This document shows positions 997 through 27,499 of a stretch of DNA of 64,000 nucleotides, piece by piece. A program made the translations under genes and the position numbers. Source of the DNA: Macrostomum lignano (Eukaryota); NCBI GenBank assembly GCA_002269645.1, contig NIVC01000647.1, positions 428,979 through 492,978 of the forward strand, given 5' to 3'. The notes beneath the pieces are model-generated. The model was not told the DNA's origin. It did not search any database and saw only the letters and a list, made by a program, of their open reading frames with translations. Positions within the stretch are counted from its first letter, which is position 1; every line of letters begins with the position of its first letter.

Positions 997-2070
997 AGTA
1001 GAATTGCGTTCTTAAGCCCGTTTTCAATTTTTGCGTACGCAATAGTTTGTGTCCCGTTTTCATTTTGTCGTTTTTGTTTTTTGTAATGCCGGCGGTATCC
1101 ACGCGTCGCGTCAAAGTTTTTCTGTTATTTTTCGGCCGTCGTTTTTTGAATTAACTTTTTTTTAGACTTGCTTGTTCATGCGTTGCTTTTTGCTTGACAT
1201 CCCCTTTCTCCTCTTCTTTTTCTTGGAGGGGGAGGATGTTGGGCTGCGCCCTTCCAGTGCTTGTGTACTCGTACTTTACCTTGTTTCCAGTTTTTCATGC
1301 CACCCCGCCCCGTCCCCCGTCTCGCGCCCGGGCCAGGGTTTGTGAGAGGTGTAAGCCTTAACCCTGGCCTAACCCTTTCTGCACCCAGCCCCCGGCCCAA
1401 CTTCTGTCCAATCTGGGTGCTGACCCTACCCCCCTCCCTCTTTGCCCGCCTCACCCTGGGGCTGCTCGTATTGGCTGGCTGGCTGATAAGCTGGCTGGGC
1501 CCCAGGGTTTGGCTCGCCGTCTCCATTCTGCCCCACCCCTTCCCCCTTTTTTGTGTATTATTTAAAGGCTAGCCCTGAGCGGGCTGCGCTCCACGCGCTT
1601 CGTTCTTACTGTTTTTTTCGTTCTTCGGCGTACCTCTGCCCTTTGCGTGCCAATAACTGCTTCGTGCCAATAAACGCTTCGTCAATTCTAACGCTTCGTT
1701 AATAACTCGATACATCAAGAAGAGGTGAGCGCGTGCTTTCTTCTTTCGGGTTGCCGCGTGGGGCCGGATTTGTAGGGACCTGAGACCGGTGAACACTCGC
1801 TGATCCCAGGGTGGTCGGTCAGGCGAACTCTCGCCGAACCGAGAGAGGCAGGGTAGGAATAGCCGGGGTGAGGGCTGGGACAAGACCTACCAGACCACCC
1901 CGAGACAGCCGTCAATGCTACACACACGAGCCCCAAAAAGGAATGTGGTCGCGCACGAAGTTGAAGCAGGGGTCGTGTGGCGCTCAAACGCATTCACCGC
2001 TGAGCTGCTTCGCATCAAAGCTTCTGCAGTGCTTCTTGGTTTGAAGTTTTGGAGTTAAAAATTCCTAACC

Positions 2071-2365
2071 AATAGCAATAACACGTGACCAGCCCCCGCA
2101 CCCACCTGTACAATAGCAATTACACGTGACCAGCCCCCGCACCCACCTGTACAATAGCAATAACACGTGACCAGCCCCCGCACCCACCTGTACAATAGCA
2201 ATAACACGTGACCAGCCCCCGCACCCACCTGTACAATAGCAATAACACGTGACCAGCCCCCGCACCCACCTGTACAATAGCAATAACACGTGACCAGCCC
2301 CCGCACCCACCTGTACAATAGCAATAACACGTGACCAGCCCCCGCACCCACCTGTACAATAGCAA
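2071..2365. repeat. 41-bp tandem repeat (about 7.2 copies) that contains the 3' end of ITPR exon 2 and its splice donor
   Basis: Unit aatagcaataacacgtgaccagcccccgcacccacctgtac starts at 2071, 2112, 2153, 2194, 2235, 2276 and 2317, with a partial copy at 2358. Confidence 0.95.
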
Positions 2366-3071
2366 ATGCTTCGTTGTCCTCGCGCAGACTGGCGCAGCCA
2401 ACTTTATTCATCACAGGCAAATCTTCGCCCTTGTCAATAGGAATACCGGTAGCGTGCACCCAGGTACCTGTGCACAGGTGTTTTAACCGGACAAAACTTG
2501 ATCTAGGCACCAGATTATCCGGCCTGGTAACTGACGTCGGGTCCAATTCGAATATTGAGCAGATATCGTGTCCATGCGGCACAAAGACCAGCTGGCAGAC
2601 ACTTCTTGACGGGTCGCCTCTCAGCTTAGTCCGCATAGGGTCTGGCGTGTCATCTTCATCTAGCTCAGCTGCCAGGTAGTTGCCTGTAGCCAGGTGCTTG
2701 AACCGGAACAGGCTCTTCCACAGGCCCGGGCCGCCGCGGCAGGCGTCGTTCTGAATGACTTCAACTTCCCACAGCGCCTTGGAGCTCGTGGCCGCGGTGG
2801 CGCTAGTGCGCAGAGTCTTGCGCAGGAATACAACCGACTTTTTCTGATACTCGTCGCCAGTGAGGAATTTCTCCTGCTCGGCGTGGAACAGTCGGACAAC
2901 GTCGCCACTTTTCAGCACTTCCGGCTTGTTCTCGCGAGACTCCATGAACAGCACCATCTTCCAGCAGGTGTTGCAGTTTACTGAATTCACCTCTTTGCAG
3001 CCCGGATTGTCTACCAGATCGTACGTGCTGGCGTGCAGCGGCTGCCCAGCATTCACCGGGCAGAGAGTCAC
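2352..3071 (-). CDS. ITPR1: Inositol 1,4,5-trisphosphate receptor, coding exon 2 (MIR repeats / IP3-binding core beta domain)
   Basis: [15 protein letters not shown]...[13 protein letters not shown]...[15 protein letters not shown]...[10 protein letters not shown] matches ITPR residues ~183-430. Acceptor ttccag at 3072-3073, donor CAG|gtgggt at 2351; 720 nt, phase 0/0. The remainder of the gene lies beyond the left edge. Confidence 0.95.
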
Positions 3072-3149
3072 CTGGAAATACAGTAGGGACATAATTGGTT
3101 CAATTAATTTATATTGCATAACTGGTTTACTTGGGAATGTGGCGTTTTT

Positions 3150-4248
<1,099 letters not shown>

Positions 4249-4794
4249 CTTATCGCCAACGATGACCTGGTCGCCAGCTGAGCGCAGCTTATAATAGGGC
4301 TGTATATAAAACCAGGAGCCCTCGTTGCCATTAGCGTCAAGCATGACTCGCATAGCATTCTTCTCCACGAGAGCGGGCAGCCGCTTGTTAACGGTGAGGA
4401 ATTTATTGCTCTTCAGGTGCAGCAGTTGCACAACGTTGCCGTATTGAACTACGCTGCCAAGGGCGCTGCTGCTCTCTTTTTCATTTTGCTGCTTCTCCAT
4501 CATAGCGGCTTGTCGCAGCTTCTCCAACAGCACGGCATCCGGAGCGGAGCTGATGGGATTCCGGGCGGCCTTCCAGAACTGCTTCTGGGCGCTGTACCGA
4601 AAGGAGGGACAAATCTGGAACAGGCAGTCGCGAAATTTCTTCGGCGGATTGTACAGGTCGCCTTCGGATGGCTGCACAATGCAGCGGTCGTCAACCAGGC
4701 CCAGAGTGCTGATGAAGCCGGTGGAGCCGCCTCCGCCTTCGGCGTACAACGAGATGATGTCGCCAATGTGCAGAAATCCGATGGCATCGGACAT
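4249..4794 (-). CDS. ITPR1: Inositol 1,4,5-trisphosphate receptor, coding exon 1 (suppressor domain)
   Basis: [20 protein letters not shown]...[13 protein letters not shown]...[10 protein letters not shown]...[11 protein letters not shown]...[27 protein letters not shown] is nearly identical to the ITPR N-terminus. 546 nt, donor GT at 4248-4247. Confidence 0.97.
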
Positions 4795-5005
4795 TATGCA
4801 CTTTTAATTCTAGATCCGGTCAGATCTTTGTTGCTAGCATGAATTTTTTTAAACAAGCATTTATTTTACAACTGACTATTAAATCATAATTATAAACAAT
4901 ATTAATAATTGAAAATTAGTGACAGCAAAGAATTTAAAACAACTATTTTTAAATCGCAATTGCCCAGCCTCATGACAAACGACTAGAAGAGAGAAGAAAC
5001 AAATT

Positions 5006-6436: not shown

Positions 6437-6625
6437 TCAGTTTAAAACAGGCGCTGGCCGCAATTCAGCCACGGTGAGTTGCATAACAGGCCGAGAGCTG
6501 CGAAAGGCTTCAGCAATGGCCCTGGCAGCTTGCTTATGCTCCAAGCCTTTCATTGGCAGGCCGTCAACAGCCAAAATCACTTGGCCAACGCGTAGCTCGG
6601 CGCAGTCGTAGGCGCTGCCACCAGG
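6437..6625 (-). CDS. WHRN: Whirlin last exon (C-terminal half of PDZ3)
   Basis: PGGSAYDCAELRVGQVILAVDGLPMKGLEHKQAARAIAEAFRSSRPVMQLTVAELRPAPVLN* resembles whirlin PDZ3 (GGSAHNCGQLKVGHVILEVNG...HREAARIIAEAFK). Acceptor tttcag at 6626-6627, TGA at 6437-6439. Confidence 0.9.
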   Translation of the reverse strand, partial: PGGSAYDCAELRVGQVILAVDGLPMKGLEHKQAARAIAEAFRSSRPVMQLTVAELRPAPVLN

Positions 6626-6684
6626 CTGAAAATGTTTAATTTATAAAACTTAGATTCTCATAGAAAAATAAACCGAGTGTTCAA

Positions 6685-6900
6685 ATTAGCCTACTGATAT
6701 AGGTAGAAAGTACGAAATTTTATCACCAAAAACTTTACTAAACGTTGAAAACATGCACCATTTTGCATATTAATTAGCCTACTGATATAAGTAGAAAGTA
6801 AGAAATTTTATCGTCAAAAAGTTCACTAAACGTTGAAAACATGCACCATTTTACATATTAATTAGCCTACTGATGTAAATAGAAAGTACGAAATTTTATA
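6685..6900. repeat. 88-bp tandem duplication (about 2.5 copies), intronic
   Basis: attagcctactgatat...gcaccatttt(g/a)catatta recurs at 6685, 6773 and 6861. Confidence 0.85.
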
Positions 6901-7160
6901 AACTATATTTATTAATTATTTATACCTATAAAAATCATAAATTTTACTGTGCAATTCTGACGTCATCAAATAAATCACCATAAAAACAAAATGTCATTAA
7001 TCTTTTTAGAATATATAGGATCACCAAACAAAAAAGTTATTAGATCTATTACCTATTAGAGAAAAGAACAAAAACCACCAGACGGATACGAGGCGCTATT
7101 CTCCATTAGCCAATAATAAAATACAATCGTCAATATACTGAAAGTAAACCGCATTCAAAC

Positions 7161-7340
7161 CTCAATAGCCGCCAGCCTTGGGAAATAGCAGCTTGGCGTG
7201 TCAGCGCCGCCCTGAATGGACATGCCAAGCCTATTTGGCCGGGTCTTGGCCAGGGCTATCACTTTGGTAACTGGGGCTGAGATCACCGCTGTGCGAGCGT
7301 CACGCGGGCCCTGCACTATTAAGGAGCCCTGCTCAGGCAG
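7161..7340 (-). CDS. WHRN: Whirlin alternative exon 6B (second version of the N-terminal half of PDZ3)
   Basis: LPEQGSL...VIALAKTRPNRLGMSIQGGADTPSCYFPRLAAIE. Acceptor gctcag at 7341-7342, donor GAG|gtttga; 180 nt, phase 0/0, homologous to exon 6A. Confidence 0.75.
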
Positions 7341-7546
7341 CTGAGCGAGGCCAAAGCGAAGCATTGCGTTTTTTATTACTAATGTATAACGATGCATTTT
7401 CCAGATTTCAAATAATTTGATTCGTATTAAAAACAGCAAAAAACAGTTAAAGGAAGAATACAATATTTCTGGAAAAAACTATGAATCCGGAGAACCTTAC
7501 TATATGACAGTTCTAAGCTTTCGAATATTTGATGTTCGAATCAAAA

Positions 7547-8255
7547 AGATCCTCAGATTCCAGTCCCTACCCTCCCAGATCCTCAGATTCTAGTCCCTAC
7601 CCTTCCACATCCTCAGATTCTAGTCCCTACCCTCCCAAATCCTCAGATTCCAGTCCCTACCCTCCCAGATCCTCAGATTCTAGTCTCTACCCTTCCAGAT
7701 CCTCAGATTCTAGTCCCTACCCTCCCAGATCCTTAGATTCTAGTCCTTACCCTCCCAGATCCCCAGATTCTAGTCCCTAACCTCCCAGATCCTTAGATTC
7801 TAGTCCCTACCCTCCCAGATCCTTAGATTCTAGTCCTTACCCTCCCAGATCCTCAGATTCTAGTCCCTACCCTAATCTGGATCTGGGAGGCTGGCACAGC
7901 AGCTGAGGATCTGGGAGGCTGGTCCAGCAGCTGAGGATCTGGGAGGCTGGCACAGCAGCTGAGGATCTGGGAGGCTGGCACAGCAGCTGAGGATCTGGGA
8001 GGCTGGCACAGCAACTGAGGATCTGGGAGGCTGGCACAGCAACTGAGGATCTGGGAGGCTGGCCCAGCAACTGAGGATCTGGGAGGCTGGCCCAGCAACT
8101 GAGGATCTGGGAGGCAGACCCATCAACTGAAAATATGGAAGCCTGGCCTGGACTAGTAAGGACTAGAATCTGAGGATCTGGAAGGGTAGGGACTGGAATC
8201 TGAGGGTCTGGGAGGGTAGGGACTGAAATCTGAGGGTCTGGGAGGTTAAGGACTA
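7547..8255. repeat. Foldback-like composite repeat: 30-bp array (7547-7873), 28-bp array (7879-8115), inverted 30-bp array (8159-8255)
   Basis: The left unit agatcctcagattctagtccctaccctccc reappears as its reverse complement (gggagggtagggactggaatctgag) on the right. The middle unit shares gaggatctgggagg. Confidence 0.85.
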
Positions 8256-8603
8256 TGTGGTGACTTGGCTGGGTTGATTTTATTCTTTATTCTTTATTCA
8301 GTGTTTGGGGGTGGTGTTTTTACCTGTTTCACTCTGTGCGCCTTTCTACAATATCTTGATGTACTCTCTTACTTATGTAGGTTCTTCAATCTGTCTACTT
8401 TTGTTCTCCACCCCTAAGCCTTATCCACTAAATGTATCGTGCTCAATAGTTACAATATAAATCGCAGTCGCTTGCCTCGTATCAAGCGTTTATCGTTCTA
8501 CAATCTAAAGTGAAGTCTTTTCAGACTATAATCCAGGGATCCATGAGTTTGGTGACTCAAAATTCAGCACCTGTCAATTGCTCAGAAACAACTCTAAACT
8601 CAC

Positions 8604-8822
8604 CTGCACATTGATAATTCTCGGCAGAGTCTGTCTCGTGTTCGCCCCGCCCTCGATAGCCAAGCCCAGAGTCGGCTGAGTCTTTCGCACGCCAGCACTG
8701 ACCGGCTCCGTGATTGTCGAAGCGTCGATACCGAAATGTCGGGCATCGTTGCCGAAACCGGTGTCCGTGCCAGAATCGTGCTGAAATGTTGACAGCAACA
8801 ATTTGCGTTTGGCCATCTTCAT
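8604..8822 (-). CDS. WHRN: Whirlin exon 6A (canonical N-terminal half of PDZ3)
   Basis: ...VRKTQPTLGLAIEGGANTRQTLPRIINVQ resembles whirlin VKKSAATLGIAIEGGANTRQPLPRIVTIQ. Acceptor gcgcag at 8823-8824, donor CAG|gtgagt; 219 nt, phase 0/0. Confidence 0.92.
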
Positions 8823-9315
8823 CTGCGCAGGCTTATTTGAGTGCTAATATAAAACTAATGGGCCACGCCCTGTTTTATCGCGATGAAAATCCTTACCTCT
8901 GTCTACACAGGGGTGGACTGTGACTTAGTCTCCCTACCTCGCCCCCGCCTCCCATCTGTTCCCCTTCATCCCCGCTGCTACCCTGCTCCCTTCTCCACTC
9001 GCAGGTGGGGTGAGGCCTGGCTCTAAAAGGGCAAGAGAGAACTGACTGAGGAGATCCCTAAGCCAGTATAGCCAGTCGGTTGAAGCGGACAAAATATGTT
9101 GATTAGAGGGGACGTACGATCAGCAACTGAGGATGCAAGCAGATTAACGATAATTCATGGCTGGTGCGGCAAAAACAGAGATAGGTGGGAAACAAAATAA
9201 TTGAGCAGGTGTCACCAGACAATACAGCGCTAGCCTTTACTTAAAACAAGTGACATTCCATCTGCACTTAAACTGAATTCCAATAAATGCCACGACTTCG
9301 ATTCAATATACTATA

Positions 9316-11595
9316 ATCCCAGATCCCAGATCCTAGATCCCAGATCCCAGATCCCAGATCCTAGATCCCAGATCCTAGATCCCAGATCCCAGATCCTAGA
9401 TCCCAGATCCTAGATCCTAGATCCCAGATCCTAGATCCTAGATCCCAGATCCTAGATCCCAGATCCTAGATCCCAGATCCTAGATCCTAGATCCTAGATC
9501 CCAGATCCTAGATCCCAGATCCTAGATCCCAGATCCTAGATCCTAGATCCTAGATCCTAGATCCTAGATCCTAGATCCTAGATCCCAGATCCCAGATCCC
9601 AGATCCTAGATCCCAGATCCTAGATCCCAGATCCTAGATCCTAGATCCTAGATCCCAGATCCCAGATCCTAGATCCCAGATCCTAGATCCTAGATCCCAG
9701 ATCCTAGATCCCAGATCCTAGATCCCAGATCCTAGATCCCAGATCCTAGATCTTAGATCCTAGATCCCAGATCCTAGATCCCAGATCCTAGATCCCAGAT
9801 CCTAGATCCCAGATCCTAGATCCCAGATCCTAGATCCCAGATCCTAGATCCCAGATCCTAGATCCCAGATCCTAGATCCCAGATCCTAGATCCCAGATCC
9901 TAGATCCCAGATCCCAGATCCCAGATCCCAGATCCTAGATCCCAGATCCTAGATCCCAGATCCTAGATCCCAGATCCTAGATCCCAGATCCTAGATCCCA
10001 GATCCTAGATCCCAGATCCTAGATCCCAGATCCTAGATCCCAGATCCTAGATCCTAGATCCCAGATCCTAGATCCCAGATCCTAGATCCCAGATCCTAGA
10101 TCCCAGATCCCAGATCCTAGATCCTAGATCCCAGATCCTAGATCCCAGATCCTAGATCCCAGATCCTAGATCCCAGATCCTAGATCCCAGATCCTAGATC
10201 CCAGATCCTAGATCCCAGATCCTAGATCCCAGATCCTAGATCCCAGATCCTAGATCCCAGATCCTAGATCCCAGATCCTAGATCCCAGATCCTAGATCCC
10301 AGATCCTAGATCCCAGATCCTAGATCCCAGATCCTAGATCCCAGATCCTAGATCCCAGATCCTAGATCCCAGATCCTAGATCCCAGATCTTAGATCCCAG
10401 ATCCTAGATCCCAGATCCTAGATCCCAGATCCTAGATCCCAGATCCTAGATCCCAGATCCTAGATCCCAGATCCTAGATCCCAGATCCTAGATCCCAGAT
10501 CCTAGATCCCAGATCCTAGATCCCAGATCCTAGATCCCAGATCCTAGATCCCAGATCCTAGATCCCAGATCCTAGATCCCAGATCCTAGATCCCAGATCC
10601 TAGATCCCAGATCCTAGATCCCAGATCCTAGATCCCAGATCCTAGATCCCAGATCCTAGATCCCAGATCCTAGATCCCAGATCCTAGATCCCAGATCCTA
10701 GATCCCAGATCCTAGATCCCAGATCCTAGATCCCAGATCCTAGATCCCAGATCCTAGATCCCAGATCCTAGATCCCAGATCCTAGATCCCAGATCCTAGA
10801 TCCCAGATCCCAGATCCTAGATCCCAGATCCTAGATCCCAGATCCTAGATCCCAGATCCTAGATCCCAGATCCTAGATCCCAGATCCTAGATCCCAGATC
10901 CTAGATCCCAGATCCTAGATCCCAGATCCTAGATCCCAGATCCTAGATCCCAGATCCTAGATCCCAGATCCTAGATCCCAGATCCTAGATCCCAGATCCT
11001 AGATCCCAGATCCTAGATCCCAGATCCTAGATCCCAGATCCTAGATCCCAGATCCTAGATCCCAGATCCTAGATCCCAGATCCTAGATCCCAGATCCTAG
11101 ATCCCAGATCCTAGATCCCAGATCCTAGATCCCAGATCCTAGATCCCAGATCCTAGATCCCAGATCCTAGATCCCAGATCCTAGATCCCAGATCCTAGAT
11201 CCCAGATCCTAGATCCCAGATCCTAGATCCCAGATCCTAGATCCCAGATCCTAGATCCCAGATCCTAGATCCCAGATCCTAGATCCCAGATCCTAGATCC
11301 CAGATCCTAGATCCCAGATCCTAGATCCCAGATCCTAGATCCCAGATCCTAGATCCCAGATCCTAGATCCCAGATCCTAGATCCCAGATCCTAGATCCCA
11401 GATCCTAGATCCCAGATCCTAGATCTCAGATCCTTGATCCCAGATCCTAGATCCCAGATCCTAGATCCCAGATCCTAGATCCCAGATCCTAGATCCTAGA
11501 TCCCAGATCCTAGATCCTAGATCCCAGATTCCAGATCCCAGATCCTAGATCCTAGATCCCAGATTCCAGATCCCAGATCCTAGATCCTTGATCCC
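9316..11595. repeat. Heptamer satellite (ATCCTAG/ATCCCAG)n, mostly a 14-bp dimer, about 2.3 kb, in whirlin intron 5
   Basis: Directly visible, with a homogeneous core and more variable edges. Confidence 0.98.
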
Positions 11596-11614
11596 ATACA
11601 CGCCAGCAGCTCAC

Positions 11615-11714
11615 CATGGTCCTAGCCTGCTGTTTAACTGGCGTCGTGTCCGTATCGTCGTAGCGTCGACCAGACGGCAGAATGGATCCGCTGCGCGACG
11701 CCAGATTTCTGCGA
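11615..11714 (-). CDS. WHRN: Whirlin exon 5 (linker)
   Basis: tttcag|T CGC AGA...ACC ATG|gtgagc; 100 nt. It bridges the phase-2 end of exon 4 to the phase-0 start of exon 6. Confidence 0.75.
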
Positions 11715-11985
11715 CTGAAATTCAATGCGAATAATATTCGATTTAGCTGGTTATTGCACAATATTTTGCATAATAATTGGCTTGCAGTGCTACTTGTAAG
11801 TAGGCAAAAAAATACCAAATACGAGCGTATGTACGAGCTATTTCATACGTTTTATACCTTTATTGGCTTTAAATACAAAAGTGAAAAATAGAGAAGAAAA
11901 TCAGAAGAGATTGAACTGTTTTGCGGTTGTGCATTTAAACTGGGAAGGTTTTTTATGCAGGAAATGGAACACAAGCGGGGGGACA

Positions 11986-12316
11986 GAAGCGGGAGGGAGA
12001 GAAGCGGGCGGGAGAGAAGCGAGAGGGAGAGAAGCGGGAGGGAGAGAAGCGAGAGGGAGAGAAGCGGGAGAGAAGCGGGAGGGAGAGAAGCGGGACTGAC
12101 AGAAGCGGGAGGGAGATAAGCGGGCGGGAGAGAAGCGGGAGGGAGAGAAGCGGGAGGGAGAGAAGCGGGACTGAGAGAAGCGGGAGGGAGAGAAGCGGGA
12201 GGGGGAGAAGCGGGAGAGAAGCGGGAGGGAGAGAAGCAGAAGGAGAGAAGCGGAGGGAGAGAAGCGGAAGGAGAGAAGCGGGAGGGAGAGAAGCGGAAGG
12301 AGAGAAGCGGGAGGGA
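11986..12316. repeat. About 15-bp purine-rich minisatellite (gaagcgggagggaga)
   Basis: Directly visible in whirlin intron 4; it is the source of the spurious SLPPA/RFSPS ORF tails. Confidence 0.9.
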
Positions 12317-12359
12317 GTGCCGGAAGGGATCGGGAAAACGCAAGCAAAAAGATTCAAAC

Positions 12360-13306
12360 CTTCTCAGCTCCGGTCTGTCAACTTCGTCGTCCTCCGAGGC
12401 GACCAACACGACGCCTTCGTTGTCACCGCCGGCGCCGCCATCAACTCCGTCGAAGTCTTCCTCCGGCTCAACCGGGATGGTGTTAATGAGCAGCTCCACT
12501 CCGCTATCGTCGCTGCCAGGCTGCGGCAGAGTCCTACCGCCATCTTTGCCATCTCTATTACGATCGTTAGACATGATTAGACTATCGTTAAGCTGCCGTA
12601 TAGCCTCCTCAATGCCGTGGTTGTTGCCAGGGCCAGCCTGAGGACTATTGCTGAGGACAGCGCGACGCTTCTTAGCAAATCGACCAGCTCGAGAACCGCG
12701 GCCGCCGCCGTCATTGTCAGTATCGGAGGATTCCTCCGGCGGGAAATAAGTCAAATATTGATTATCAGTGTCCGCATCGGCTTCGTAAGTTTGAAAGAGC
12801 CTGTCGTAGGTAGGTCGGTCTGCCGGCCTGAGCAGCGGTCTGAGATGGGGATGAGCTCTAGGCGGATCCAACAGCAGGTGGCGCAGAGCCAATACTAAGC
12901 CTCTGACATCGACTTCACCGCGTTTGTACTCTTCTAGATAGTACACCAGACTGCCGGCCTGCTCGGGTGACAAAATCTCGTTAGTCAGCTCGGCAACTAA
13001 ACCGGCAATATGCGGCTCCTGCTGCTGCTGCTCCATCATGCTAGCCAGACTCTGGTCTTGCAGCAGCAGACTCGGCTCCGAACGCCAGCGCCCATTGTTA
13101 GACCCGGAACCGCCGCCGGCTGTGGCCTGGGAGAATAGAGAATTAGCAAAAGTAGACTTGGCGTAGGGCAGCTTGCCTACACGTCGAATGGTTAGCGATA
13201 GGCGAGGCGGCGAACATTTCAGACGGGCAACCGCCTCGGAGTGGCTTTTGTCCAGTAGGGATTCGCCGTTCACTGTCAGGATCTCGTCGCCAACGCGTAG
13301 GCCAGC
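12360..13306 (-). CDS. WHRN: Whirlin exon 4 (C-terminal half of PDZ2, second harmonin-homology domain, linker)
   Basis: AGLRVGDEILTVNGESLLDKSHSEAVARLK...LTIRRVGKLPYAK resembles whirlin PDZ2; ILSPEQAGSLVYYLEEYKRGEVDVRGLVLALRHLL...LRPLLRPADRPTYD is the HHD. Acceptor ttcgcag at 13307-13308, donor AG|gtttga; 947 nt. Confidence 0.92.
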
Positions 13307-13569
13307 CTGCGAAATGAAATGGAAAGTACGTGCAATGCCGATATGTAGTGAAAACAGCTTTACACATAGCCCGTCGAACTTTTCACCCGGAATTTCGCCC
13401 GGAATTTTTTGCGTTCACCCGGACTTTTTTTCTTATTCCAGTAATGCAATCAGATCCGGGTGGAATTTCCGGATCTGTAACGAAAGTTTACAGAATCCGG
13501 GCGAATTTTCCGGATCAAAAAGAAAAATTCCGGAAAATTGACCCGGATCAATAAAAAAATTCCGGTGAC

Positions 13570-14400
13570 AATTCCGGGTGAATTCCGGGCGAGTGAACCG
13601 GATCAGCACACAATTCCGGGTGAGTGAACCGGATCAGCACACAATTCCGGGCGAGTGAACCGGATCAGCACACGAATCCGGGCTAAATTCCGGGCGAGTG
13701 AACCGGATCAGCACACAATTCCGGGTGAGTGAACCGGATCAGCACACAATTCTGGGCGAATTCCGGGTGAGTGAACCGGATCAGCACACAATTCCGGGTG
13801 AGTGAACCGGATCAGCACACAATTCCGGGCGAGTGAACCGGATCTGCACACGAATCCGGGCGAATTCCGGGCGAGTGAACCGGATCAGCACACAATTCCG
13901 GGTGAGTGAACCGGATCAGCACACAATTCTGGGCGAATTCCGGGTGAGTGAACCGGATCAGCACACAATTCCGGGTGAGTGAACCGGATCAGCACACAAT
14001 TCCGGGCGAGTGAACCGGATCTGCACACGAATCCGGGCGAATTCCGGGCGAGTGAACCGGATCAGCACACAATTCCGGGCGAGTGAACCGGATCTGCACA
14101 CGAATCCGGGTGAGTGAACCGGATCAGCACACAATTCTGGGCGAATTCCGGGTGAGTGAACCGGATCAGCACACAATTCCGGGTGAGTGAACCGGATCAG
14201 CACACAATTCCGGGCGAGTGAACCGGATCTGCACGCGAATCCGGGCGTATTCCGGGCGAGTGAACCGGATCTGCACGCGAATCCGGGCGTATTCCGGGCG
14301 AGTGAACCGGATCAGCACACAATTCCGGGCGAGTGAACCGGATCAGCACACAATTCCGGGTGAGTGAACCGGATCAGCACACGAATCCAGGTGAATTCTG
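13570..14400. repeat. About 31-bp subterminal tandem array of the transposon
   Basis: Unit ccgggcgagtgaaccggatcagcacacaatt with variants. Confidence 0.92.
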
Positions 14401-14965
14401 GATGATTGAACCGGATTTGCAGCCAAATCTTGGGCTTATCACAATAGCGGAAAATTAAAAAAAGAACGGGTCATTGTTATATACATTTTCCACGACTACG
14501 AATTGAATCGAATTCGATTTAGCCGTCCTCGAACAGAAATACTGAATCCAGTTGTACACAACTGTAAATCGTATATTTCTATGCACTTCTACGTACTTTC
14601 CGAAACAAAAAAATGCTGACCTTCTGAATGTCACTCGGATGGGCAGCTGGACTTCGATGCTACCATTAACTTTTTTTAAAGCCGTATACGGCTTTATATA
14701 CCTTATCGCGACATTCGATACTCTTCAGGGATCCCCATCGCCTACCTCTGATTGCATTCGTCAGGTGGGTCACTCGCTATACAGCTAATTAGCTAGTTAA
14801 CTCAAGTCAGCTGACTTGTCTATTAAACGTAGACAGCCAATGTCTCGAAGAGCGTTTCTAATGAAATCAAATCCAGCGAATTTGGCCTTAACAAAAACCT
14901 AGAAATTAATTGCAAATAAATGCGGTGGTGGTGTTATGCACTCGATCTTGGACATCGCCAGCATT

Positions 14966-15608
14966 TCACTCCTCGAGTAGCTCGACGTCTGGAGATAGCT
15001 CGATGTTTCCGGAAGTCGGCCCCTCATTTTCGGCAGCACTGGCGATTCGTCGCGCCTTCACCTGGTCCGCCTTCTTTTGCCGCTCTGCGGCTGGCCGAGA
15101 TTGAAAGAGCACTGCCTGGCTTCTCGCCCCGGTCGTGTCGGATTCCGACGAGCTCGTAGCGGAGATAGCTTCCAATCGAAGAACTTCAGCTTTCAGCTGA
15201 CGATTTTCGGCTTGAGCCTCCGACAGCTTTTCACGAACTCCGCTCAATTGATGGCCTATTAAGTACACAAAAATGAGGAGAGTGGCGAGGCAGATTCAAA
15301 CTTAAGAATCGACAACACATATATATATGAGGCTGCTAACGTCTTCTAGTATATGCATAAAAAACTTACACAGTTCGTCCTCGGCTTCGCCTTGGGCCCG
15401 AATCTGATCCATCATGGTAGTGCATGACGGGCATCGTGACGGCTGCGGTTGCTGCGACGGCACACGCGCCAAAGCAGTCGCTTCAATCGCTTGGGCCTTT
15501 CTATCCAAAGGCCCCTTCCAGAGAGTGGCGGAATACCCGGGATCCGGTACTCTTGTTAGCAGCTGTGACAACGTGATCTGCTCACGGCTGGTGCAACTGC
15601 AAACGCCT
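14966..15608 (-). pseudogene. Spliced ORF remnants inside the transposon (Cys-containing segment plus coiled coil), product unknown
   Basis: Segments SQLLTRVPD...EAEDEL and HQLSGVREKLSEAQAENRQLKAEVLRLEA can be joined in frame by ctgt|gtaagt ... ttaatag|gc. No recognisable family. Confidence 0.35.
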
Positions 15609-15972
15609 TAGACAAACCACTGGAGCATGTACCGGAATAATTCGGATTAGCGTCTATCTTAAGAGGAAAGCTGCTTTGCATACTGGGCCAGGTAGAGCTA
15701 TTTGGAACTATGCCACAGTCTCCGTCTAGACACCCAGCTGTGCCAAACAATATGGTTGGCTGATTATGCTTCTAAGCGTCAAATATGACGATAGAATCAT
15801 TCAGCCCGTTGACACATTAAGCAGCTGTAACAGACTACATGCCAGTGGAAGTCAAACCTCTCGCACACAAACAAACAATTTTTCAATTGTAACCTGTACG
15901 GAGGATGGGCTCAGCCTCACATTACGGACGCTACAGTGCCGCCATAAAGCAGATCAGTTGTCTCATCAAAGC

Positions 15973-16253
15973 GAGGCTTGATTACCCCTCGCAGGTCAGC
16001 TTAGCAGCTGCCTTGAGTCCCAACAGAAGCGAGGATTGATTATCCATCGCAGGTCAGCTTATCAGCTGCCTTGAGCCACAACAGAAGCGAGGATTGATTA
16101 TCCATCGCAGGTCAGCTTATCAGCTGCCTTGAGCCACAACAGAAGCGAGGATTGATTATCCATCGCAGGTCAGCTTATCAGCTGCCTTGAGCCACAACAG
16201 AAGCGAGGATTGATTATCCATCGCAGGTCAGCTTATCAGCTGCCTTGAGCCAC
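15973..16253. repeat. 58-bp tandem repeat (about 4.5 copies) between two ~400-bp direct repeats inside the transposon
   Basis: caacagaagcgaggattgattatccatcgcaggtcagcttatcagctgccttgagcca at 16021, 16079, 16137 and onward. Flanked by the duplicated segments ~15573-15990 and ~16300-16695. Confidence 0.88.
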
Positions 16254-17479
16254 ACGATATGGTTACCGACCATAGTAGTCCGTATAGACTACTCTAGACG
16301 TGATCTGCTCACGGCTGGTGCAACTGCAAACGCCTTAGACAAACCACTGGAAGCATGTACCGACAAGAATCGGATTAGCGTCTATCTTAATAGGAAAGCT
16401 GCTTTGCATACTGGGCCGTCTCCGTCTAGACACCCAGCTGTGCCAAACAATATGGTTGGCTGATTTTATGCTTCTAAGCGTCAAATATGACGATAGAATC
16501 ATTCAGCCCTTTGACACACTAAGCAGCTGTGATAGACTACATGCCAGTGGAAGTCAAACCTCTCGCACACAAACAGGGCACAATTTTTCAATTGTCACCT
16601 GTACGGAGGATGGGCACAGCCGCACATTACGGACGCTACAGAGCCGCCGAAAAGCAGATCAATTCACATTGCAATTTCGAGGCTTTATTACCCCTCGCTT
16701 TCCAAGAGGAATTAGCGCCGTTGACCAAATGGATGCCAGGGATTGCCTGATGGGATAGCCATTTGTGGGGTCTGTATTCAGCGGTTTTCCATCGGAGGCT
16801 TCCTCTTAAAATCCCCATGGTACTTGTATAATGGATGCCGGATTGATTCCGACTGAAGTGCCGAAATTTTCCCGGATCAGCTTCGCCCGGAATTTGGCTG
16901 AAATTTGGGTCAAGGGAGCTGATCTGGGTGAATTTTCCGGATCATTTGGTCCGGATCACTGGAGAATTCCGACTCAAGTTCCGAAATTTTCCCGGATCAG
17001 CTTCGCCCGGAATTTGGCTGAAATTCGGGTCAAGGGAGCTGATCCGGGTGAATTTTCCGGATCATTTGGTCAAGATCACTGGAGAATTCCGACTGAAATC
17101 CCGAAATCTCACCCGGAACATTTTCACCCGGAACACTATTGAAATTCGGGTCTACACCCAGAATTCCGTAGTGTTCCGGGTGAAAAATTCCGGAAAATCC
17201 AACCGGAACAGCTTTCCTTTTCCCGAAATTTTACCGGATCATATTTCCGGATCTTTTTCCGGAAAAAGGGGCTGTTCCGGGCCAAAAAAGCTGATCCGGG
17301 CGTTCACCCGGAAATCAATTAAAAATCGGGCCTGGATCACGAAATTCCGGGAAAAATTCCGGGTGAAAAGTTCGACGGGAGGTTAATAGGTTAAAAAAGC
17401 TGAAAGGGAACAAAAGTGGCGAAGAAGGTAGAAGAGAGGTGGAAATGGAGAAAGGGGAATGGATAGGAGTTAACAGGAG

Positions 17480-17982
17480 GCGAAGAGGGGATAACAGAGG
17501 GCGGAGGGGGGTGGAGAGGGGAGAACAGGGGGCGGAGAGGGAATAACAGGGGGCGGAGAGGGGAGAACAGGGGGCGGAGAGGAATTACCAGGGGGCGGAG
17601 AGGGAATACCAGGGGGCGGAGGGGATAACAGGGGCAGAGAGGGGATAACAGGGGGCTGAGAGGGGATAACAGGGGGCTGAGAGGGGATAACAGGGGGCTG
17701 AGAGGGGATAACAGGGGGCGGAGAAGGGATAAGAGGGGGCGGAGAAATGGATAACAGGGATCAGAGAGAGAGGATAACAGAGGGCTGAGAGAGGATAACA
17801 GGGGCTTAGAGGGGATAACAGGGGCTTAGAGGGGATAACAGGGGGCTGAGAGGGGATAACAGGGGGCTGAGAGGGGATAACAGGGGGCTGAGAGGGGATA
17901 ACAGGGGGCTGAGAGGGGATAACAGAGGGCTGAGAGGGGATAACAGGGGGCTGAGAGGGGATAACAGAGGGCTGAGAGGGGG
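17480..17982. repeat. 21-bp purine-rich minisatellite (gagaggggataacagggggct)
   Basis: Directly visible; degenerate toward the left end. Confidence 0.9.
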
Positions 17983-18036
17983 TATGTAAAAGCATACTAA
18001 GAAGGGAAAAAGCACAACAAGTTCCTTATCCCAAAC

Positions 18037-18339
18037 CTGTTCAGCCGCAGAGAAGGGATCCACAGCGCTAACAAAAATTCCTAAACCATAATCCGCTCCG
18101 CCGCGGACAGACACGCCCAGAGGTTGGCCTTGAACCAGAAGCTGCTTAACCGGCGGTCCAGCAGCATCGGCATGCAGAGGCGGCGGCGCGGGCGGGCTGA
18201 CGGGCCGGCCCTGGGCGTCAACCCAAGAGAACTGGCGCAGGGCGGACGAGTCGCCGGGCAGGTACGGCCTGCTAGGTGAGGCCGGCGATCGGAGCGCCAA
18301 ACGAAGAGGTCGACCGGACTTTTGAGCAGATTTAATTAG
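18037..18339 (-). CDS. WHRN: Whirlin exon 3 (end of PDZ1, linker, start of PDZ2)
   Basis: LIKSAQKSGRPLRLALR...FSWVDAQGRPVSPP (whirlin YTWVDPQGRSISPP)...LGVSVRGGADYGLGIFVSAVDPFSAAEQ. Acceptor ttttag at 18340-18341, donor CAG|gtttgg; 303 nt. Confidence 0.9.
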
Positions 18340-18739
18340 CTAAAACAAATTGTTATGGCTTCGCTGTTGTGTGTACGCAATTAATGAGTAGTTTTTATTT
18401 AAATAAAATTAGTTTCACACGCTAATTAAATATGCAGATTTAGCTAGAGGCAAGCAAACGCCTTCTATATCTACTGAGAACACAGTAATTCTTATCTGAA
18501 ATTAAACATTTGCCAGGAAGATTTTTGGTTTTTTGGCGACCGACTATTTTTCAGCTGGCTTATCAGTTTGTAGAGTCGCATTGTAAAATACAACTGCTGC
18601 CTCCGCTGAACATAGTAGAAATTATATATCTCGTATCGTTATTGGGAGTGCTAATATTGGCACTTTATGAGGAAGTAAAACCGATATCGGTAGACAGTTA
18701 TTAATGGAAGCAATTATTGCATATCGAAATACACGGGGA

Positions 18740-19040
18740 AGATGATAGAGGGGAAGAAAAGAAAGGGGAAAGGGGAAGAGGGGAAGAGGGAGGGGAAGAG
18801 GGGAAGAGGGGAAGAGAAAAGAGGAAGAGGGAAAGAGAAGAGTGAGGGGAAGAGAGAAGAGAGAGGGGAAGAGGGGAAGAGGCGAAGAGGAGAGAAGGGA
18901 AGAAGGAGAGAAGGGAAGAAGGAGAGGGAAAGAGGGGAAGATGGGAAGAGGGAGGGGAAGAGGGGAGAGAGAGGTGAAGAGGGGAAGAGAGAGGAGAGGG
19001 AAAAGAGAGGGAGAAGAGGAGAGGGAGCAGAGGAGAGGGA
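18740..19040. repeat. GA-rich low-complexity tract
   Basis: Degenerate gaggggaa repeats in whirlin intron 2. Confidence 0.85.
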
Positions 19041-19126
19041 GATAACAAGGACAAGCACTAAGAACCGAATCCCAGCATTCCCCAAGACTAAGGCATCCCC
19101 AACAAAACAAATCCCCATTCACTTAC

Positions 19127-19380
19127 AGCCACGGCTTCCCCATGCGCGAGTCCCGCAGCCGAAGTGTCGCCAACGCCGACCAGCTCGTCGCCGACCCGCA
19201 GCCCGCGCCTGTCGGCCTCGGAGTCCTCAACAACGGCAGACACATAGAGGCCGACTCCGAGCTCGGCGCCGCCGCGCAACGAGAAGCCGAAGCCTTGGCG
19301 CTCGTTCGGCGCCAGCTCGACGCCGCGGATTGGGCGCGACTGGGCTGCGGAGCCGTTGCTGGCGGGTCCCGGGGCGCTGG
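19127..19380 (-). CDS. WHRN: Whirlin exon 2 (PDZ1)
   Basis: ...GFGFSLRGGAELGVGLYVSAVVEDSEADRRGLRVGDELVGVGDTSAAGLAHGEAVA. Acceptor ttacag at 19381-19382, donor GCT|gtaagt; 254 nt, phase 1/0. Confidence 0.92.
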
Positions 19381-19430
19381 CTGTAAGAGGTTGACATTGT
19401 GGCAGCTTAGTGATTAGATACTGTAGATAC

Positions 19431-20170
19431 GATAGCTATTCTGTAGATGTGATAGCTATTCTGTAGATGTGATAGCTATTCTGTAGATGTGATAGCTATT
19501 CTGTAGATGTGATAGCTATTCTGTAGATGTGATAGCTATTCTGTAGATGTGATAGCTATTCTGTAGATGTGATAGCTATTCTGTAGATGTGATAGCTATT
19601 CTGTAGATGTGATAGCTATTCTGTAGATGTGATAGCTATTCTGTAGATGTGATAGCTATTCTGTAGATGTGATAGCTATTCTGTAGATGTGGTAGCTATT
19701 CTGTAGATGTGATAGCTATTCTGTAGATGTGATAGCTATTCTGTAGATGTGGTAGCTATTCTGTAGATGTGATAGCTATTCTGTAGATGTGATAGCTATT
19801 CTGTAGATGTGATAGCTATTCTGTAGATGTGATAGCTATTCTGTAGATGTGATAGCTATTCTGTAGATGTGATAGCTATTCTGTAGATGTGATAGCTATT
19901 CTGTAGATGTGATAGCTATTCTGTAGATGTGATAGCTATTCTGTAGATGTGATAGCTATTCTGTAGATGTGATAGCTATTCTGTAGATGTGATAGCTATT
20001 CTGTAGATGTGATAGCTATTCTGTAGATGTGATAGCTATTCTGTAGATGTGATAGCTACTCTGTAGATGTGATAGCTATTCTGTAGATGTGATAGCTACT
20101 CTGTAGATGTGATAGCTATTCTGTAGATGTGATAGCTATTCTGTAGATGTGATAGCTACTCTGTAGACGT
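19431..20170. repeat. Near-perfect 20-bp minisatellite (gatagctattctgtagatgt), about 37 copies, in whirlin intron 1
   Basis: Directly visible, with only a few substitutions. Confidence 0.98.
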
Positions 20171-20222
20171 GATTGAATTATAAAGCAACGTAAACTTCAT
20201 GATATAAGAAAGCAGGTCTCAC

Positions 20223-20667
20223 CCCTGCCACCCAGGCTGCTGCCGCTGCTAGCACGATTCTTCTTTTGCTGCTTTTTATGTCCATCCTCCTGCTGCGAAG
20301 CCGGCCTCATCAAAGGTAGAAAGTCCTGATTCTCGCACAGGTGCCTGAATCGTTTCTGATCGCCACGAGGCAGAGCTGTGGTTAGCAGAGGCACCAGCTC
20401 TGGCCGCTCGCTTATGTAAGGACCCAGCCGATGGACCAGGGTTGGCACATCCCGATCGCGCTGGTACTGACTCAGAATGCTGGTGATGAGCACCCTGTCA
20501 GCCTGGGAGAATCCGCTCTCCAAGTAGCTCTGAATATCTTGCACCAAAGGATTGTTGGACGATACAGAGGGCGAAGGCTGGCTGTGGCCGCCGCCAGCTC
20601 TCAGTCCCATAGTTGAAGTTGAAGCAGCCAGCTTTGACTTTCTTTTAGCTGAAGAGATAATATTCAT
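20223..20667 (-). CDS. WHRN: Whirlin coding exon 1 (N-terminal harmonin-homology domain)
   Basis: LESGFSQADRVLITSILSQYQRDRDVPTLVHRLGPYISERPELVPLLTTALPRGDQKRF is HHD-like. Donor AGG G|gtgaga, phase 1, matches exon 2. The start ATG is inferred. Confidence 0.8.
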
Positions 20668-26393: not shown

Positions 26394-27150
26394 AATCCAA
26401 GGACCAAGAGCAGCACCCTCTGATGTCATTGTAAGCCCTAGTTGTCGACAATATATAAATTATGCTTTTAGTTGACTGGTGGTCGTCGCACCACGCCCAA
26501 TAAAGAAAACTGTTCGAGTTCTTAGAAGCATTTCATAGAAAAAAATATTTTTTAAAAATCCATAGGCCTTTTATCACTACAAAAACTACCATTTGTACCG
26601 TATTTCTTTTATTCTTTACCAGTTTCTGGTAGATTTTAGGTAAAATGGCTTGTACTTATCTTTCAGCCTGTTATAATGCCATTAAGTACCGGACTGAATG
26701 ATACGCATTGGTACACATGAAAACAAAGTAAATGAAACAACAGCGCATTTCCTCCTGATCCCTGGGTTAACTGTATTCTTCATGTGCGTTCAGCTGTCCC
26801 TGACCCGTAATTGAGGCTGATGAATAGCAGGTGATTGTTTTTTGGGTGACACATGAGTGACTAAAAATGACGACTTGACATGCAAGTGATTAAAAATGAC
26901 GAGTTACAGGCAAGTGCTTAAAATTCAATGACTAATCAAGTAAAAGGATGGAAAACCTCGTTTCTTGAAAAATTTTAGGGGTAGGTTGTTCCGAAAAGAT
27001 ACACTTTTTCATCCCAAAGACCCACTGTTCATCGTTTGATACTCGTATGTTTTGCCTTAATTTCTTATAGCGATCTATATTGATATTCATGGAGCTTTTC
27101 GTTCCAAAAAATAGTCAGTCAGTCTGTCTGTCTGTCAGTCAGTCCGTCAG

Positions 27151-27448
27151 TCAGTCACTGTCAGCACTCATGGCACTGACAGCATACACAGCTTCGCACT
27201 GTTCGGCATCCGACGCTGCGTGTGTCGCCACCTCGCCGTCTTCACCATCACGCTCGACTCTTGAGCTGCCCACGGACGCCTCCTCTGGTCCGCTCATCGA
27301 ACTCTCGCCGATATTCGCGTACAACGCGTCGTCATCAGAGACCGCCTGAGTCGTAACTGAGGAAGTCGTTGATCCGCGTCTGAGCTTGCTGCCACTGCCG
27401 CATGTCCTCGGCGAGGGCGGCGCTGGAGATTCTGGCGGCGGCTGGGGA
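27151..27448 (-). pseudogene. Frameshifted paralog of the ITIM-bearing terminal exon at 32932-33290
   Basis: ALAEDMRQWQQAQTRINDFL in one frame and DDDALYANIGE...EAVYAVS in another; cccgcag acceptor; runs into a (TGAC)n tract. Confidence 0.5.
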
Positions 27449-27499
27449 CTGCGGGATGGGACGGGCGGCTCAATGACACTGTGATGGACAGCTCAAAGT

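What the first reader, a model, noticed from the sequence alone, without database searches (positions are those of the whole stretch)
6437..8822. Whirlin PDZ3 has two interchangeable exons for its ligand-binding half
Seen: exon 6A (8604-8822, ...RKTQPTLGLAIEGGANTRQTLPRIINVQ) and exon 6B (7161-7340, ...AKTRPNRLGMSIQGGADTPSCYFPRLAAIE) are homologous, both phase 0/0 with valid splice sites, and both end at the same PDZ position before the single C-half exon (6437-6625). Established: the carboxylate-binding loop and strand beta-B, which set PDZ peptide specificity, lie in this half; vertebrate whirlin PDZ3 binds partners such as myosin XVa. Inference: mutually exclusive splicing switches PDZ3 specificity (818-aa vs 805-aa isoforms). 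I do not know this for whirlin orthologs.
Basis: partly seen in the sequence, partly recalled or inferred. Interest (0 to 1): 0.7.

Follow-up and report, generated by a model that had tools for sequence, protein, structure and literature searches.

The report
Duplicated half-PDZ exon in flatworm whirlin
The whirlin gene of the flatworm Macrostomum lignano carries a second, diverged but intact copy of the exon for the first half of its third PDZ domain; it is probably an alternative exon, but no transcript containing it could be found.

Summary
The window is Macrostomum lignano scaffold NIVC01000647.1, and the gene (minus strand, 20667-6437) is a whirlin orthologue. Exons 6A and 6B and the shared last exon exist as described. 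6A and 6B are homologous, both are phase 0/0, and both end at the same PDZ3 position. One correction: both RNA-based GenBank models start 6A at 8780, not 8822. That makes 6A 177 nt against 180 nt for 6B, and the isoforms 804 and 805 aa, not 818 and 805.

Evidence that 6B is a maintained coding exon:
- It is a 61% GC island in 27-32% GC intron.
- It adds about 13 bits to the PDZ profile, as 6A does.
- It keeps 9 of 11 family-invariant residues.
- It aligns to 6A with only in-frame gaps despite about 0.74 substitutions per site.
- It is intact, splice sites included, in the second genomic copy (dN/dS 0.24).
- 6B+7 models as a whirlin-type PDZ.

Both deposited transcripts join 6A directly to exon 7, and no database protein contains 6B. 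Sixteen other whirlin loci have a single N-half exon. The alpha-B helix is in the shared exon, so a swap would tune specificity more than switch its class.

Verdict: a credible, lineage-specific candidate for mutually exclusive splicing, with 6B expression unproven.

The parts
6437..20667 (-). Whirlin orthologue of Macrostomum lignano (Mlig026596.g1, PAA79224.1): E1 20667-20223, E2 19380-19127, E3 18339-18037, E4 13306-12360, E5 11714-11615, 6A, 6B, E7
   Evidence: Exon model built. It matches deposited protein P0038 exactly, except for the 6A acceptor. Three PDZ stretches by Pfam. PDZ2 and PDZ3 hit whirlin structures first. HHD2 aligns to herring whirlin at E 2e-6.
11615..11714 (-). Constitutive exon 5, ending in phase 0 (ACCATG|gtgagc); the upstream partner of either alternative exon
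   Evidence: The junction ...KQQARTM|HDSG appears in P0038 and P0001.
8604..8780 (-). Exon 6A, the canonical PDZ3 N-half (beta-A to beta-C, TLGLAIEGGANTRQTLPRIINVQ); 177 nt, 59 aa, phase 0/0; RNA-supported
   Evidence: Present in both deposited transcript-derived proteins. 6A+7 hits mouse whirlin PDZ3 6Y9N at E 7e-28. 100% identical in the second gene copy.
8781..8822 (-).
   Evidence: The upstream acceptor has a weak pyrimidine tract. Identical in L001.
7161..7340 (-). Exon 6B, a diverged paralogue of the PDZ3 N-half (RLGMSIQGGADTPSCYFPRLAAIE); 180 nt, 60 aa, phase 0/0; candidate alternative exon with no transcript evidence
   Evidence: adds 12.7 bits to PDZ; GC 0.61 against 0.27-0.32 in the flanks; intact in L001, 3 synonymous and 2 nonsynonymous changes, no indels.
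6437..6625 (-). Shared last exon: PDZ3 C-half (alpha-A, beta-D, beta-E, alpha-B with the alpha-B1 His, beta-F) and the stop codon
   Evidence: (22.9 bits to PDZ on its own).
7547..8255 (.). Inverted tandem-repeat arrays in the 6A-6B intron. They fold into a hairpin of about 700 nt in the pre-mRNA. Any role in exon choice is unknown.
   Evidence: MFE -469.9 kcal/mol, z = -26. Also present in L001.

Best explanation
An old tandem duplication of the exon encoding beta-A to beta-C of whirlin PDZ3 left two versions between exon 5 and the last exon. 6A is the canonical version and is used in the known transcripts. 6B is a diverged version that has been kept as a coding exon. Most likely it is spliced in place of 6A in a minor or cell-type-restricted isoform, giving an 805 aa protein against 804 aa.

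The two proteins would share the alpha-B helix, so both should still read class-I motifs. They would differ in:
- the carboxylate-loop pocket residue (L-G-L in 6A, L-G-M in 6B);
- two beta-B residues (Ala to Ser, and Glu to Gln at a family-invariant position);
- a beta-B/beta-C loop one residue longer in 6B;
- beta-C.
This would tune which partners PDZ3 binds.

Shown: the existence, homology, phase and splice signals of both exons; the coding-like composition of 6B; the conservation of 6B in the second gene copy; the fold compatibility of 6B+7.
Inferred: that 6B is spliced at all, that its use excludes 6A, and that ligand preference changes.
For: - Similar length (177 and 180 nt), the same phase, canonical AG/GT sites. 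The 6B donor hexamer gtttga is identical to the RNA-supported donor of exon 4.
- Significant homology between the two exons.
- The best full-length matches to 6B, in a panel built from the hits (whirlin, PATJ/INADL and MAGI multi-PDZ proteins), are whirlin PDZ3 N-halves.
- 6B is a GC island (GC 0.61, GC3 0.65) whose edges coincide with the splice sites, inside 0.27-0.32 GC intron. This matches the constitutive exons.
- 6B raises the PDZ profile score of exon 7 from 22.9 to 35.6 bits, as 6A does (35.2).
- 6B keeps 9 of 11 near-invariant N-half residues of 82 whirlin PDZ3 homologues.
- 6A and 6B differ by about 0.74 substitutions per site but align with only 3 in-frame gaps. About 16-32 indels would be expected for neutral DNA at the local indel-to-substitution ratio.
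- 6B and its splice sites are intact in the second gene copy, with 3 synonymous and 2 conservative changes and no indels. dN/dS is 0.24 against 0.27 for the constitutive exons.
- AlphaFold models 6B+7 as well as 6A+7, and its top 10 structural matches are whirlin PDZ3.
- A 6B-like longer loop (GGSDTPMASFPR) is the only PDZ3 loop of another animal's whirlin.
Against: - Both deposited, RNA-seq-derived gene models skip 6B, although alternative CDS forms were retained in that annotation.
- The 90% cluster holds only the two 6A-type proteins.
- No protein containing 6B turned up in 5.8 billion clusters or 1.84 billion representatives. No Macrostomum fragment of either isoform from transcriptome assemblies was present either, so this absence has little weight.
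- The comparison between the two gene copies has low power (P = 0.12 for the synonymous excess, P = 0.17 for zero indels).
- Nothing in the sequence enforces exclusivity. Both exons are multiples of 3, the intron between them is 1263 nt, and all sites are U2-type.
- No tandem N-half exon exists in the barnacle or in 15 metagenomic whirlin loci.
- In humans only about 13-21% of homology-predicted MXE candidates were validated (PMC5740500).
- The AlphaFold alignment is dominated by 6A-type sequences, so the model is not an independent test.
Confidence: 0.5

Rival explanations
1. 6B is a silent relic. It was once a functional duplicated exon, or part of a once-used alternative, but it is no longer spliced. 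It merely has not yet decayed in the two recently diverged gene copies.
For: - It is absent from both RNA-based deposited models and from all protein collections.
- Conservation between the copies is not significantly better than in the flanking intron (2.8% against 3.3-4.2% mismatches; P = 0.12 and 0.17).
- The invariant beta-B Glu is replaced by Gln.
- Most homology-predicted MXE candidates fail validation in humans.
Against: - The sharp GC island with exon-like GC3 has not relaxed towards the AT-rich intron composition.
- The open frame, both splice sites and 9 of 11 invariant residues are kept after about 0.74 substitutions per site of divergence from 6A, with only in-frame gaps.
- The substitution pattern between the copies looks like that of the constitutive exons.
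- Any death of the exon would have to be very recent.
Confidence: 0.27
2. 6B is expressed but not in a mutually exclusive way. Either it is a cassette exon included after 6A (a 864 aa in-frame product, in which the 6B copy next to exon 7 forms the PDZ and the 6A half is left orphaned), or it belongs to a differently started transcript.
For: - Double inclusion stays in frame.
- Pfam places the PDZ on 6B+7 when both halves are present (35.0 bits, residues 88-169).
- The 6A-6B intron is long enough to be spliced, and its roughly 700-nt hairpin would bring the 6A donor near the 6B acceptor.
- Trans-splicing is common in this species (38.8% of genes, PMC5730564).
Against: - An orphan half-PDZ of 59 residues is likely to misfold.
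- Paired duplicated exons of near-equal length and the same phase are the classic signature of substitution, not addition.
- A trans-spliced 6B-E7 mRNA would have its first in-frame ATG inside beta-B (GMSIQ), which truncates the domain (sequence).
- No such transcript has been deposited.
Confidence: 0.18
3. 6B is a chance open frame in an intron with fortuitous splice-like signals.
For: Short exons with AG and GT borders are common in 5 kb of intron, and 6B alone gives no hit in PDB or Pfam.
Against: - Reciprocal best hit with 6A in 64 kb; no shuffle of 2000 reached the observed score.
- A gain of 12.7 bits to the PDZ profile.
- It ends at exactly the ancient intron position shared with the barnacle and with metagenomic whirlins.
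- It is a GC island.
Confidence: 0.02

Closest known systems
Tandem-exon-duplication-derived mutually exclusive exons, as predicted by WebScipio/Kassiopeia criteria (PMC3228551, PMC3923563, PMC5740500, PMC8373072)
   Same: Neighbouring exons of near-equal length, the same phase, canonical sites and detectable homology. They encode the same structural element, so one replaces the other without breaking the domain.
   Different: No splice-junction evidence for 6B. The exon lengths are multiples of three, so double inclusion would not trigger NMD. In the human/Drosophila orthologue subset with validated MXEs, 71% have incompatible frames. The duplication is lineage-specific, whereas most annotated human events are ancient.
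FGFR2 IIIb/IIIc and Dscam1 exon 4 and exon 6 clusters (from my own knowledge, not tested here)
   Same: Alternative exons encode half of a binding domain (half of an Ig domain). The other half is constant, and the swap changes binding specificity.
   Different: A different fold (Ig, not PDZ). Those cases have proven regulated splicing and known regulators or competing RNA structures. No docking or selector pair was looked for here: with only two copies about 4% diverged, such a scan would have had no power.
Alternative splicing inside PDZ domains, such as the 5-residue beta-B/beta-C loop insertion of PTP-BL/PTPN13 PDZ2 (from my own knowledge)
   Same: Splicing alters the beta-B/beta-C loop of a PDZ and thereby its ligand binding. 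The most obvious structural change in 6B is also a beta-B/beta-C loop one residue longer and of different composition.
   Different: That case is an alternative splice-site insertion, not a swap of the whole beta-A to beta-C half by a paralogous exon.
Vertebrate whirlin isoforms: long, N-terminal and C-terminal short forms (Ebrahim 2016 and Mathur 2015, as cited in PMC10018040)
   Same: The same gene family, in which isoform diversity affects which scaffolding modules are present.
   Different: Vertebrate isoforms arise from alternative promoters and terminations and keep or drop whole domains. My two literature searches found no report of an alternative PDZ3 half.

Membership tests
Whirlin (WHRN/DFNB31) orthologue | Three PDZ domains in the order PDZ1, PDZ2, long linker, C-terminal PDZ3 | tested here: met
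   Pfam finds three PDZ stretches. PDZ2 is closest to human whirlin PDZ2 1UF1 (E 3e-24). PDZ3 lies at the C-terminus.
Whirlin (WHRN/DFNB31) orthologue | PDZ3 with the whirlin-specific motif LG[IV]AIEGGANT[RK]QxLPR[IV] | tested here: met
   6A reads TLGLAIEGGANTRQTLPRIINVQ. 6A+7 matches mouse whirlin PDZ3 6Y9N at E 7e-28. The motif census of 81 homologues is.
Whirlin (WHRN/DFNB31) orthologue | Harmonin-homology domain (HHD2) after PDZ2 | tested here: met
   Pfam did not flag it. The region aligns at the right position to herring whirlin HHD2, including YYLEEY+G...LV+AL..LL, at E 2e-6.
Whirlin (WHRN/DFNB31) orthologue | Best full-length database relatives are annotated whirlins | tested here: met
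   After the Macrostomum copies, the top hits are whirlin or whirlin-like proteins of coral, fishes and a barnacle (E 1e-57 to 1e-60).
Mutually exclusive exon pair from tandem exon duplication | Adjacent exons of similar length, the same phase, with canonical splice sites | tested here: met
   177 and 180 nt, both phase 0/0, with cag| acceptors and |gtgagt or |gtttga donors. Nothing lies between them but intron.
Mutually exclusive exon pair from tandem exon duplication | Significant sequence homology between the exons | tested here: met
   Score 55 against 22 +/- 4.4 for shuffles, 0 of 2000 reaching it. Reciprocal best tblastn hits in the window. 38% amino-acid identity over 39 aligned codons.
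Mutually exclusive exon pair from tandem exon duplication | Each exon is joined in RNA to both flanking constitutive exons | tested here: inconclusive
   E5-6A and 6A-E7 are supported by two RNA-derived deposited models. No source with E5-6B or 6B-E7 was found. Raw RNA-seq cannot be queried with these tools.
Mutually exclusive exon pair from tandem exon duplication | No transcripts joining the two exons, or joining that leads to a frameshift and NMD | not testable with these tools
   Joint inclusion is in frame, so exclusivity would need another mechanism. No junction data are available.
PDZ domain (Pfam PF00595), for each chimera | Score above the curated gathering threshold over the whole domain | tested here: met
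   6A+7 scores 35.2 bits and 6B+7 scores 35.6 bits against a cut-off of 23.2. Exon 7 alone scores 22.9.

The most novel reading that the evidence does not exclude
Macrostomum whirlin makes two scaffold proteins by swapping the beta-A to beta-C half of PDZ3 through mutually exclusive splicing of a lineage-specific exon pair. As far as my searches show, this would be the first PDZ domain re-tuned by a half-domain exon swap. The roughly 700-nt foldback of inverted satellite arrays that sits exactly between the two exons might take part in the exon choice.
Probability: 0.35. Interest if true: 0.55.

Novelty: new member of a known kind. Interest (0 to 1): 0.4.

Why it matters
If 6B is used, it would be a natural experiment in PDZ specificity. 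The alpha-B helix and domain core stay the same while the carboxylate loop, beta-B, the beta-B/beta-C loop and beta-C are exchanged, within a scaffold protein that organises sensory-cell complexes in vertebrates (Usher syndrome and deafness protein). It would also add a case of half-domain swapping, known from FGFR and Dscam, to a peptide-recognition module. Practically, the deposited annotation of both M. lignano whirlin copies may lack an isoform. The finding does not bear on human whirlin, because the duplication is absent from the fish, barnacle and 15 other animal loci examined.

Tried and rejected
- Searching for 6B-containing proteins. The word-indexed search with 6B+7 gave nothing. An exhaustive HMMER scan of 1.84 billion representatives with 6B alone gave only two unrelated repeat proteins. 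A PDZ3 profile that included 6B gave 274 whirlin-type hits, none above 54% identity among the 120 listed. The word-indexed tool seems to favour candidates of similar length: it missed P0001. The collections also hold no Macrostomum transcript fragments of either isoform. These negatives are therefore weak.
- 6B alone against PDB and Pfam gave no hits because it is too short. I replaced this with a panel comparison.
- Selection test between the two genomic copies. The direction fits constraint, but it is underpowered at 3-4% divergence.
- The coral whirlin locus was not on record.
- Literature. I found no report of whirlin MXEs or of MXEs inside PDZ domains.
- A search for docking and selector RNA pairs was not attempted. 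With only two copies about 4% diverged there is no covariation power, and short complementarities in 3 kb are expected by chance.
Full report
**Identity of the locus.** The window matches Macrostomum lignano assembly Mlig_3_7 (GCA_002269645.1), scaffold NIVC01000647.1, with no mismatch over 30.6 kb. The gene lies on the minus strand from 20667 to 6437. I rebuilt it from open frames and splice signals: E1 20667-20223, E2 19380-19127, E3 18339-18037, E4 13306-12360, E5 11714-11615, then 6A, 6B and the last exon 6625-6437.

The gene is a whirlin orthologue:
- Pfam finds three PDZ stretches.
- PDZ2 and PDZ3 hit human and mouse whirlin structures first (1UF1 at E 3e-24; 6Y9N at E 7e-28).
- The HHD2 region aligns to herring whirlin at the right position (E 2e-6).
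- After the Macrostomum proteins, the best full-length relatives are annotated whirlins of coral, fishes and a barnacle.

**Check of the observation.** 6B (7340-7161) is 180 nt and phase 0/0, with ctcgctcag|CTG and GAG|gtttga. The last exon is 189 nt and ends in TGA. Exon 5 ends in phase 0. 6A ends at 8604 (CAG|gtgagt). The two N-half exons end at the same PDZ position (RIINVQ|PGG and RLAAIE|PGG).

Their similarity is not chance. The local score is 55 against 22 +/- 4.4 for 2000 shuffles, none reaching it. They are each other's best non-self hit in all six frames of the 64 kb window, and there is no third copy.

One boundary needs correcting. The deposited protein of this very gene (PAA79224.1, P0038) is an exact substring of my model once the 14 residues MKMAKRKLLLSTFQ are removed. 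The second gene copy (PAA74142.1, P0001) has the same junction...KQQARTM|HDSGTD. These GenBank models come from a genome-guided RNA-seq assembly (StringTie/TACO plus de novo transcripts; PMC5730564). So the RNA-supported acceptor puts the start of 6A at 8780 (gctgtcaacatttcag|CAC), not at 8822. 6A is then 177 nt (59 aa) against 180 nt (60 aa) for 6B, and the putative isoforms are 804 and 805 aa.

**Is 6B a real coding exon or intronic debris?** Several independent lines point to long-term coding constraint.

1. *Composition.* 6B has GC 0.61 and GC3 0.65, like the constitutive exons (GC 0.54-0.73). The introns on either side are 0.32 and 0.27. The edges of the GC island coincide with the predicted acceptor and donor.
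2. *Profile fit.* Exon 7 alone scores 22.9 bits against Pfam PDZ. Adding 6A gives 35.2 bits and adding 6B gives 35.6 bits.
3. *Family-specific residues.* In an alignment with 82 whirlin PDZ3 homologues, 6B keeps 9 of 11 near-invariant N-half positions. It differs at Ala to Ser and at the invariant beta-B Glu, which becomes Gln. Against a panel built from the hits (whirlin, PATJ/INADL and MAGI multi-PDZ proteins), its best full-length matches are all whirlin PDZ3 N-halves, running to the exon end.
4. *Frame preservation.* The 6A and 6B cores differ at 47% of nucleotides (Jukes-Cantor distance 0.74). At the local intronic indel-to-substitution ratio of 0.24, neutral DNA would have gathered roughly 16-32 indels in 180 nt. 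The alignment needs 3 gaps, all in frame.
5. *The second genomic copy.* L001 (NIVC01000975.1) is probably a homeologous or duplicated-chromosome copy; the assembly is known to be redundant. It has 6B intact with identical splice sites, 5 substitutions (3 synonymous, plus R13H and L30V) and no indels. dN/dS is 0.24 against 0.27 for the constitutive exons. This last test is weak on its own: the introns differ by only 3-4%, P = 0.12 for the synonymous excess and P = 0.17 for zero indels.
6. *Structure models.* AlphaFold2, with an 83-sequence alignment, models 6B+7 as a complete PDZ (pLDDT 88.4, pTM 0.79), as good as 6A+7 (88.8, 0.79). The ten best structural matches are whirlin PDZ3 crystal and NMR structures (rmsd 0.8-2.2 A). 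The alignment is mostly 6A-type, so this shows compatibility only.
7. *A precedent for the loop.* The unusual loop of 6B is not unprecedented. The whirlin gene of an unidentified animal in a metagenome (L004, with PDZ2, HHD2 and PDZ3) has GGSDTPMASFPR as its only PDZ3 loop, also one residue longer.

**Is 6B used, and exclusively?** Here the evidence runs out.
- Both deposited transcript-derived models join 6A directly to exon 7. The 90% cluster holds only those two proteins, although the submitted annotation removed only alternative transcripts with an identical CDS.
- No protein containing 6B exists in the collections. They hold no Macrostomum fragment of the 6A form from transcriptome assemblies either, so they are uninformative for a presumably low-expressed gene.
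- These results do refute 'always included together'.
- Nothing in the sequence forces exclusivity. Both exons are multiples of three, so double inclusion (864 aa) and double skipping (745 aa) stay in frame. The intron between them is 1263 nt, and all sites are U2-type.
- If both were included, Pfam places the domain on 6B+7. A cassette reading therefore remains possible.
- In humans only about 13-21% of homology-predicted MXE candidates were validated (855 to 1,399 of 6,541; PMC5740500). That tempers the prior, although the extra constraint evidence here raises it.

**Phylogenetic reach.** The intron after ...IxxIQ is ancient. It sits at the same position in the barnacle Pollicipes and in many metagenomic whirlin loci. 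None of these 16 loci has a second N-half exon. 6B is no closer to Macrostomum 6A (41%) than to the barnacle (42%) or fish (35-38%) N-halves. It is therefore either an old duplicate kept only in this lineage or a fast-evolving one. No genome of another macrostomid could be reached with these tools.

**Likely mechanism and size of the effect.** In PDZD7 and whirlin PDZ3 complexes the ligand lies between beta-B and alpha-B.
- Main-chain bonds come from the carboxylate loop and beta-B.
- The hydrophobic pocket uses the Leu and Ile residues of that loop and strand.
- A beta-B/beta-C loop residue contacts upstream ligand positions.
- The side chains that set class-I recognition and that separate PDZD7 from whirlin specificity (alpha-B1 His, alpha-B2, alpha-B8/9) are in alpha-B (PMC9317961).

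In Macrostomum alpha-B (EHKQAARAIAEA) is in the shared exon 7. A 6A/6B exchange would change the pocket (L-G-L to L-G-M), beta-B (A-I-E to S-I-Q), the loop (ANTRQT-LPR to ADTPSCYFPR) and beta-C (IINVQ to LAAIE). I therefore expect a shift in preference at positions 0, -1, -3 and upstream, not a switch of class. This part is inference.

**Verdict.** My probabilities are:
- about 0.5 that 6B is used in place of 6A;
- about 0.18 that it is used in some other way;
- about 0.27 that it is a recently silenced relic.

No literature on such an event in whirlin or inside a PDZ domain was found. Interest is moderate. The finding is lineage-specific and lacks expression data. It is also cheap to test with existing RNA-seq, and it offers a neat half-domain swap in a peptide-binding module.

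Noticed in passing
window 7547-8255 (intron between 6A and 6B); also L001:19104-19967: Inverted tandem arrays: a 30-mer x11 facing a 30-mer x3.3, around a 28-mer x9. In the pre-mRNA they fold into a near-perfect hairpin of about 700 nt (MFE -469.9 kcal/mol against -304 +/- 6 for shuffles, z = -26). The hairpin sits exactly between the two alternative exons. It is kept in the second gene copy, where the aligned 30-mer array spans about 600 nt against 327 nt in the window.
   Followed up: partly
window 8781-8822, minus strand: A 42-nt in-frame stretch upstream of the RNA-supported 6A acceptor begins ATGAAGATG (MKMAKRKLLLSTFQ) and is 100% identical in the second copy. It could be an alternative 3' splice site, or the start of a PDZ3-only short isoform from an internal promoter, by analogy with the vertebrate C-terminal short whirlin. 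No evidence either way.
   Followed up: partly
window 6437-6460 and L001:21040-21050: The second gene copy has a 1-nt deletion just before the stop codon. Its protein ends ...RPAPV, while the window copy ends ...RPAPVLN. The two copies therefore differ in their extreme C-terminus, which is a PDZ-binding motif in vertebrate whirlin.
   Followed up: no
window 9316-11596, 11973-12317, 17400-18030, 3100-4250, 37000-42200: An extreme load of tandem repeats inside and next to introns. Examples are a 14-mer x164 in intron 5 and a 15-mer x24 immediately after the exon 4 donor. The repeat-derived 'open frames' that result could mislead ORF-based reading.
   Followed up: partly
L004:5725-6105 (also L005, L006); L010, L011: The whirlin gene of an unidentified animal in a metagenome (GCA_013332595.1, SRR11343834) encodes PDZ3 in a single exon, with a 6B-like loop one residue longer (GGSDTPMASFPRIIAVQ). 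Two other metagenomic loci have GGADVAQQSLPR, also one residue longer. So the length of the beta-B/beta-C loop varies among whirlins.
   Followed up: partly
L003:55769-55896 (barnacle Pollicipes pollicipes whirlin locus): Two partial tandem copies of the start of the PDZ3 C-half exon (LQPYGSAFSAGGLMVGQVL) lie just upstream of the real exon at 55911. Local duplication around this intron also occurs in another phylum, here without an intact exon.
   Followed up: no
window about 2000-4803 (minus strand) and 27150-33350 (minus strand): Neighbouring genes. Downstream lies an inositol-trisphosphate-receptor gene; its N-terminus reads [20 protein letters not shown]... and it is annotated with ITPR Pfam domains in L002. 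Upstream there are open frames carrying VYADI and LYANI tyrosine motifs that resemble ITIM-like tails.
   Followed up: no
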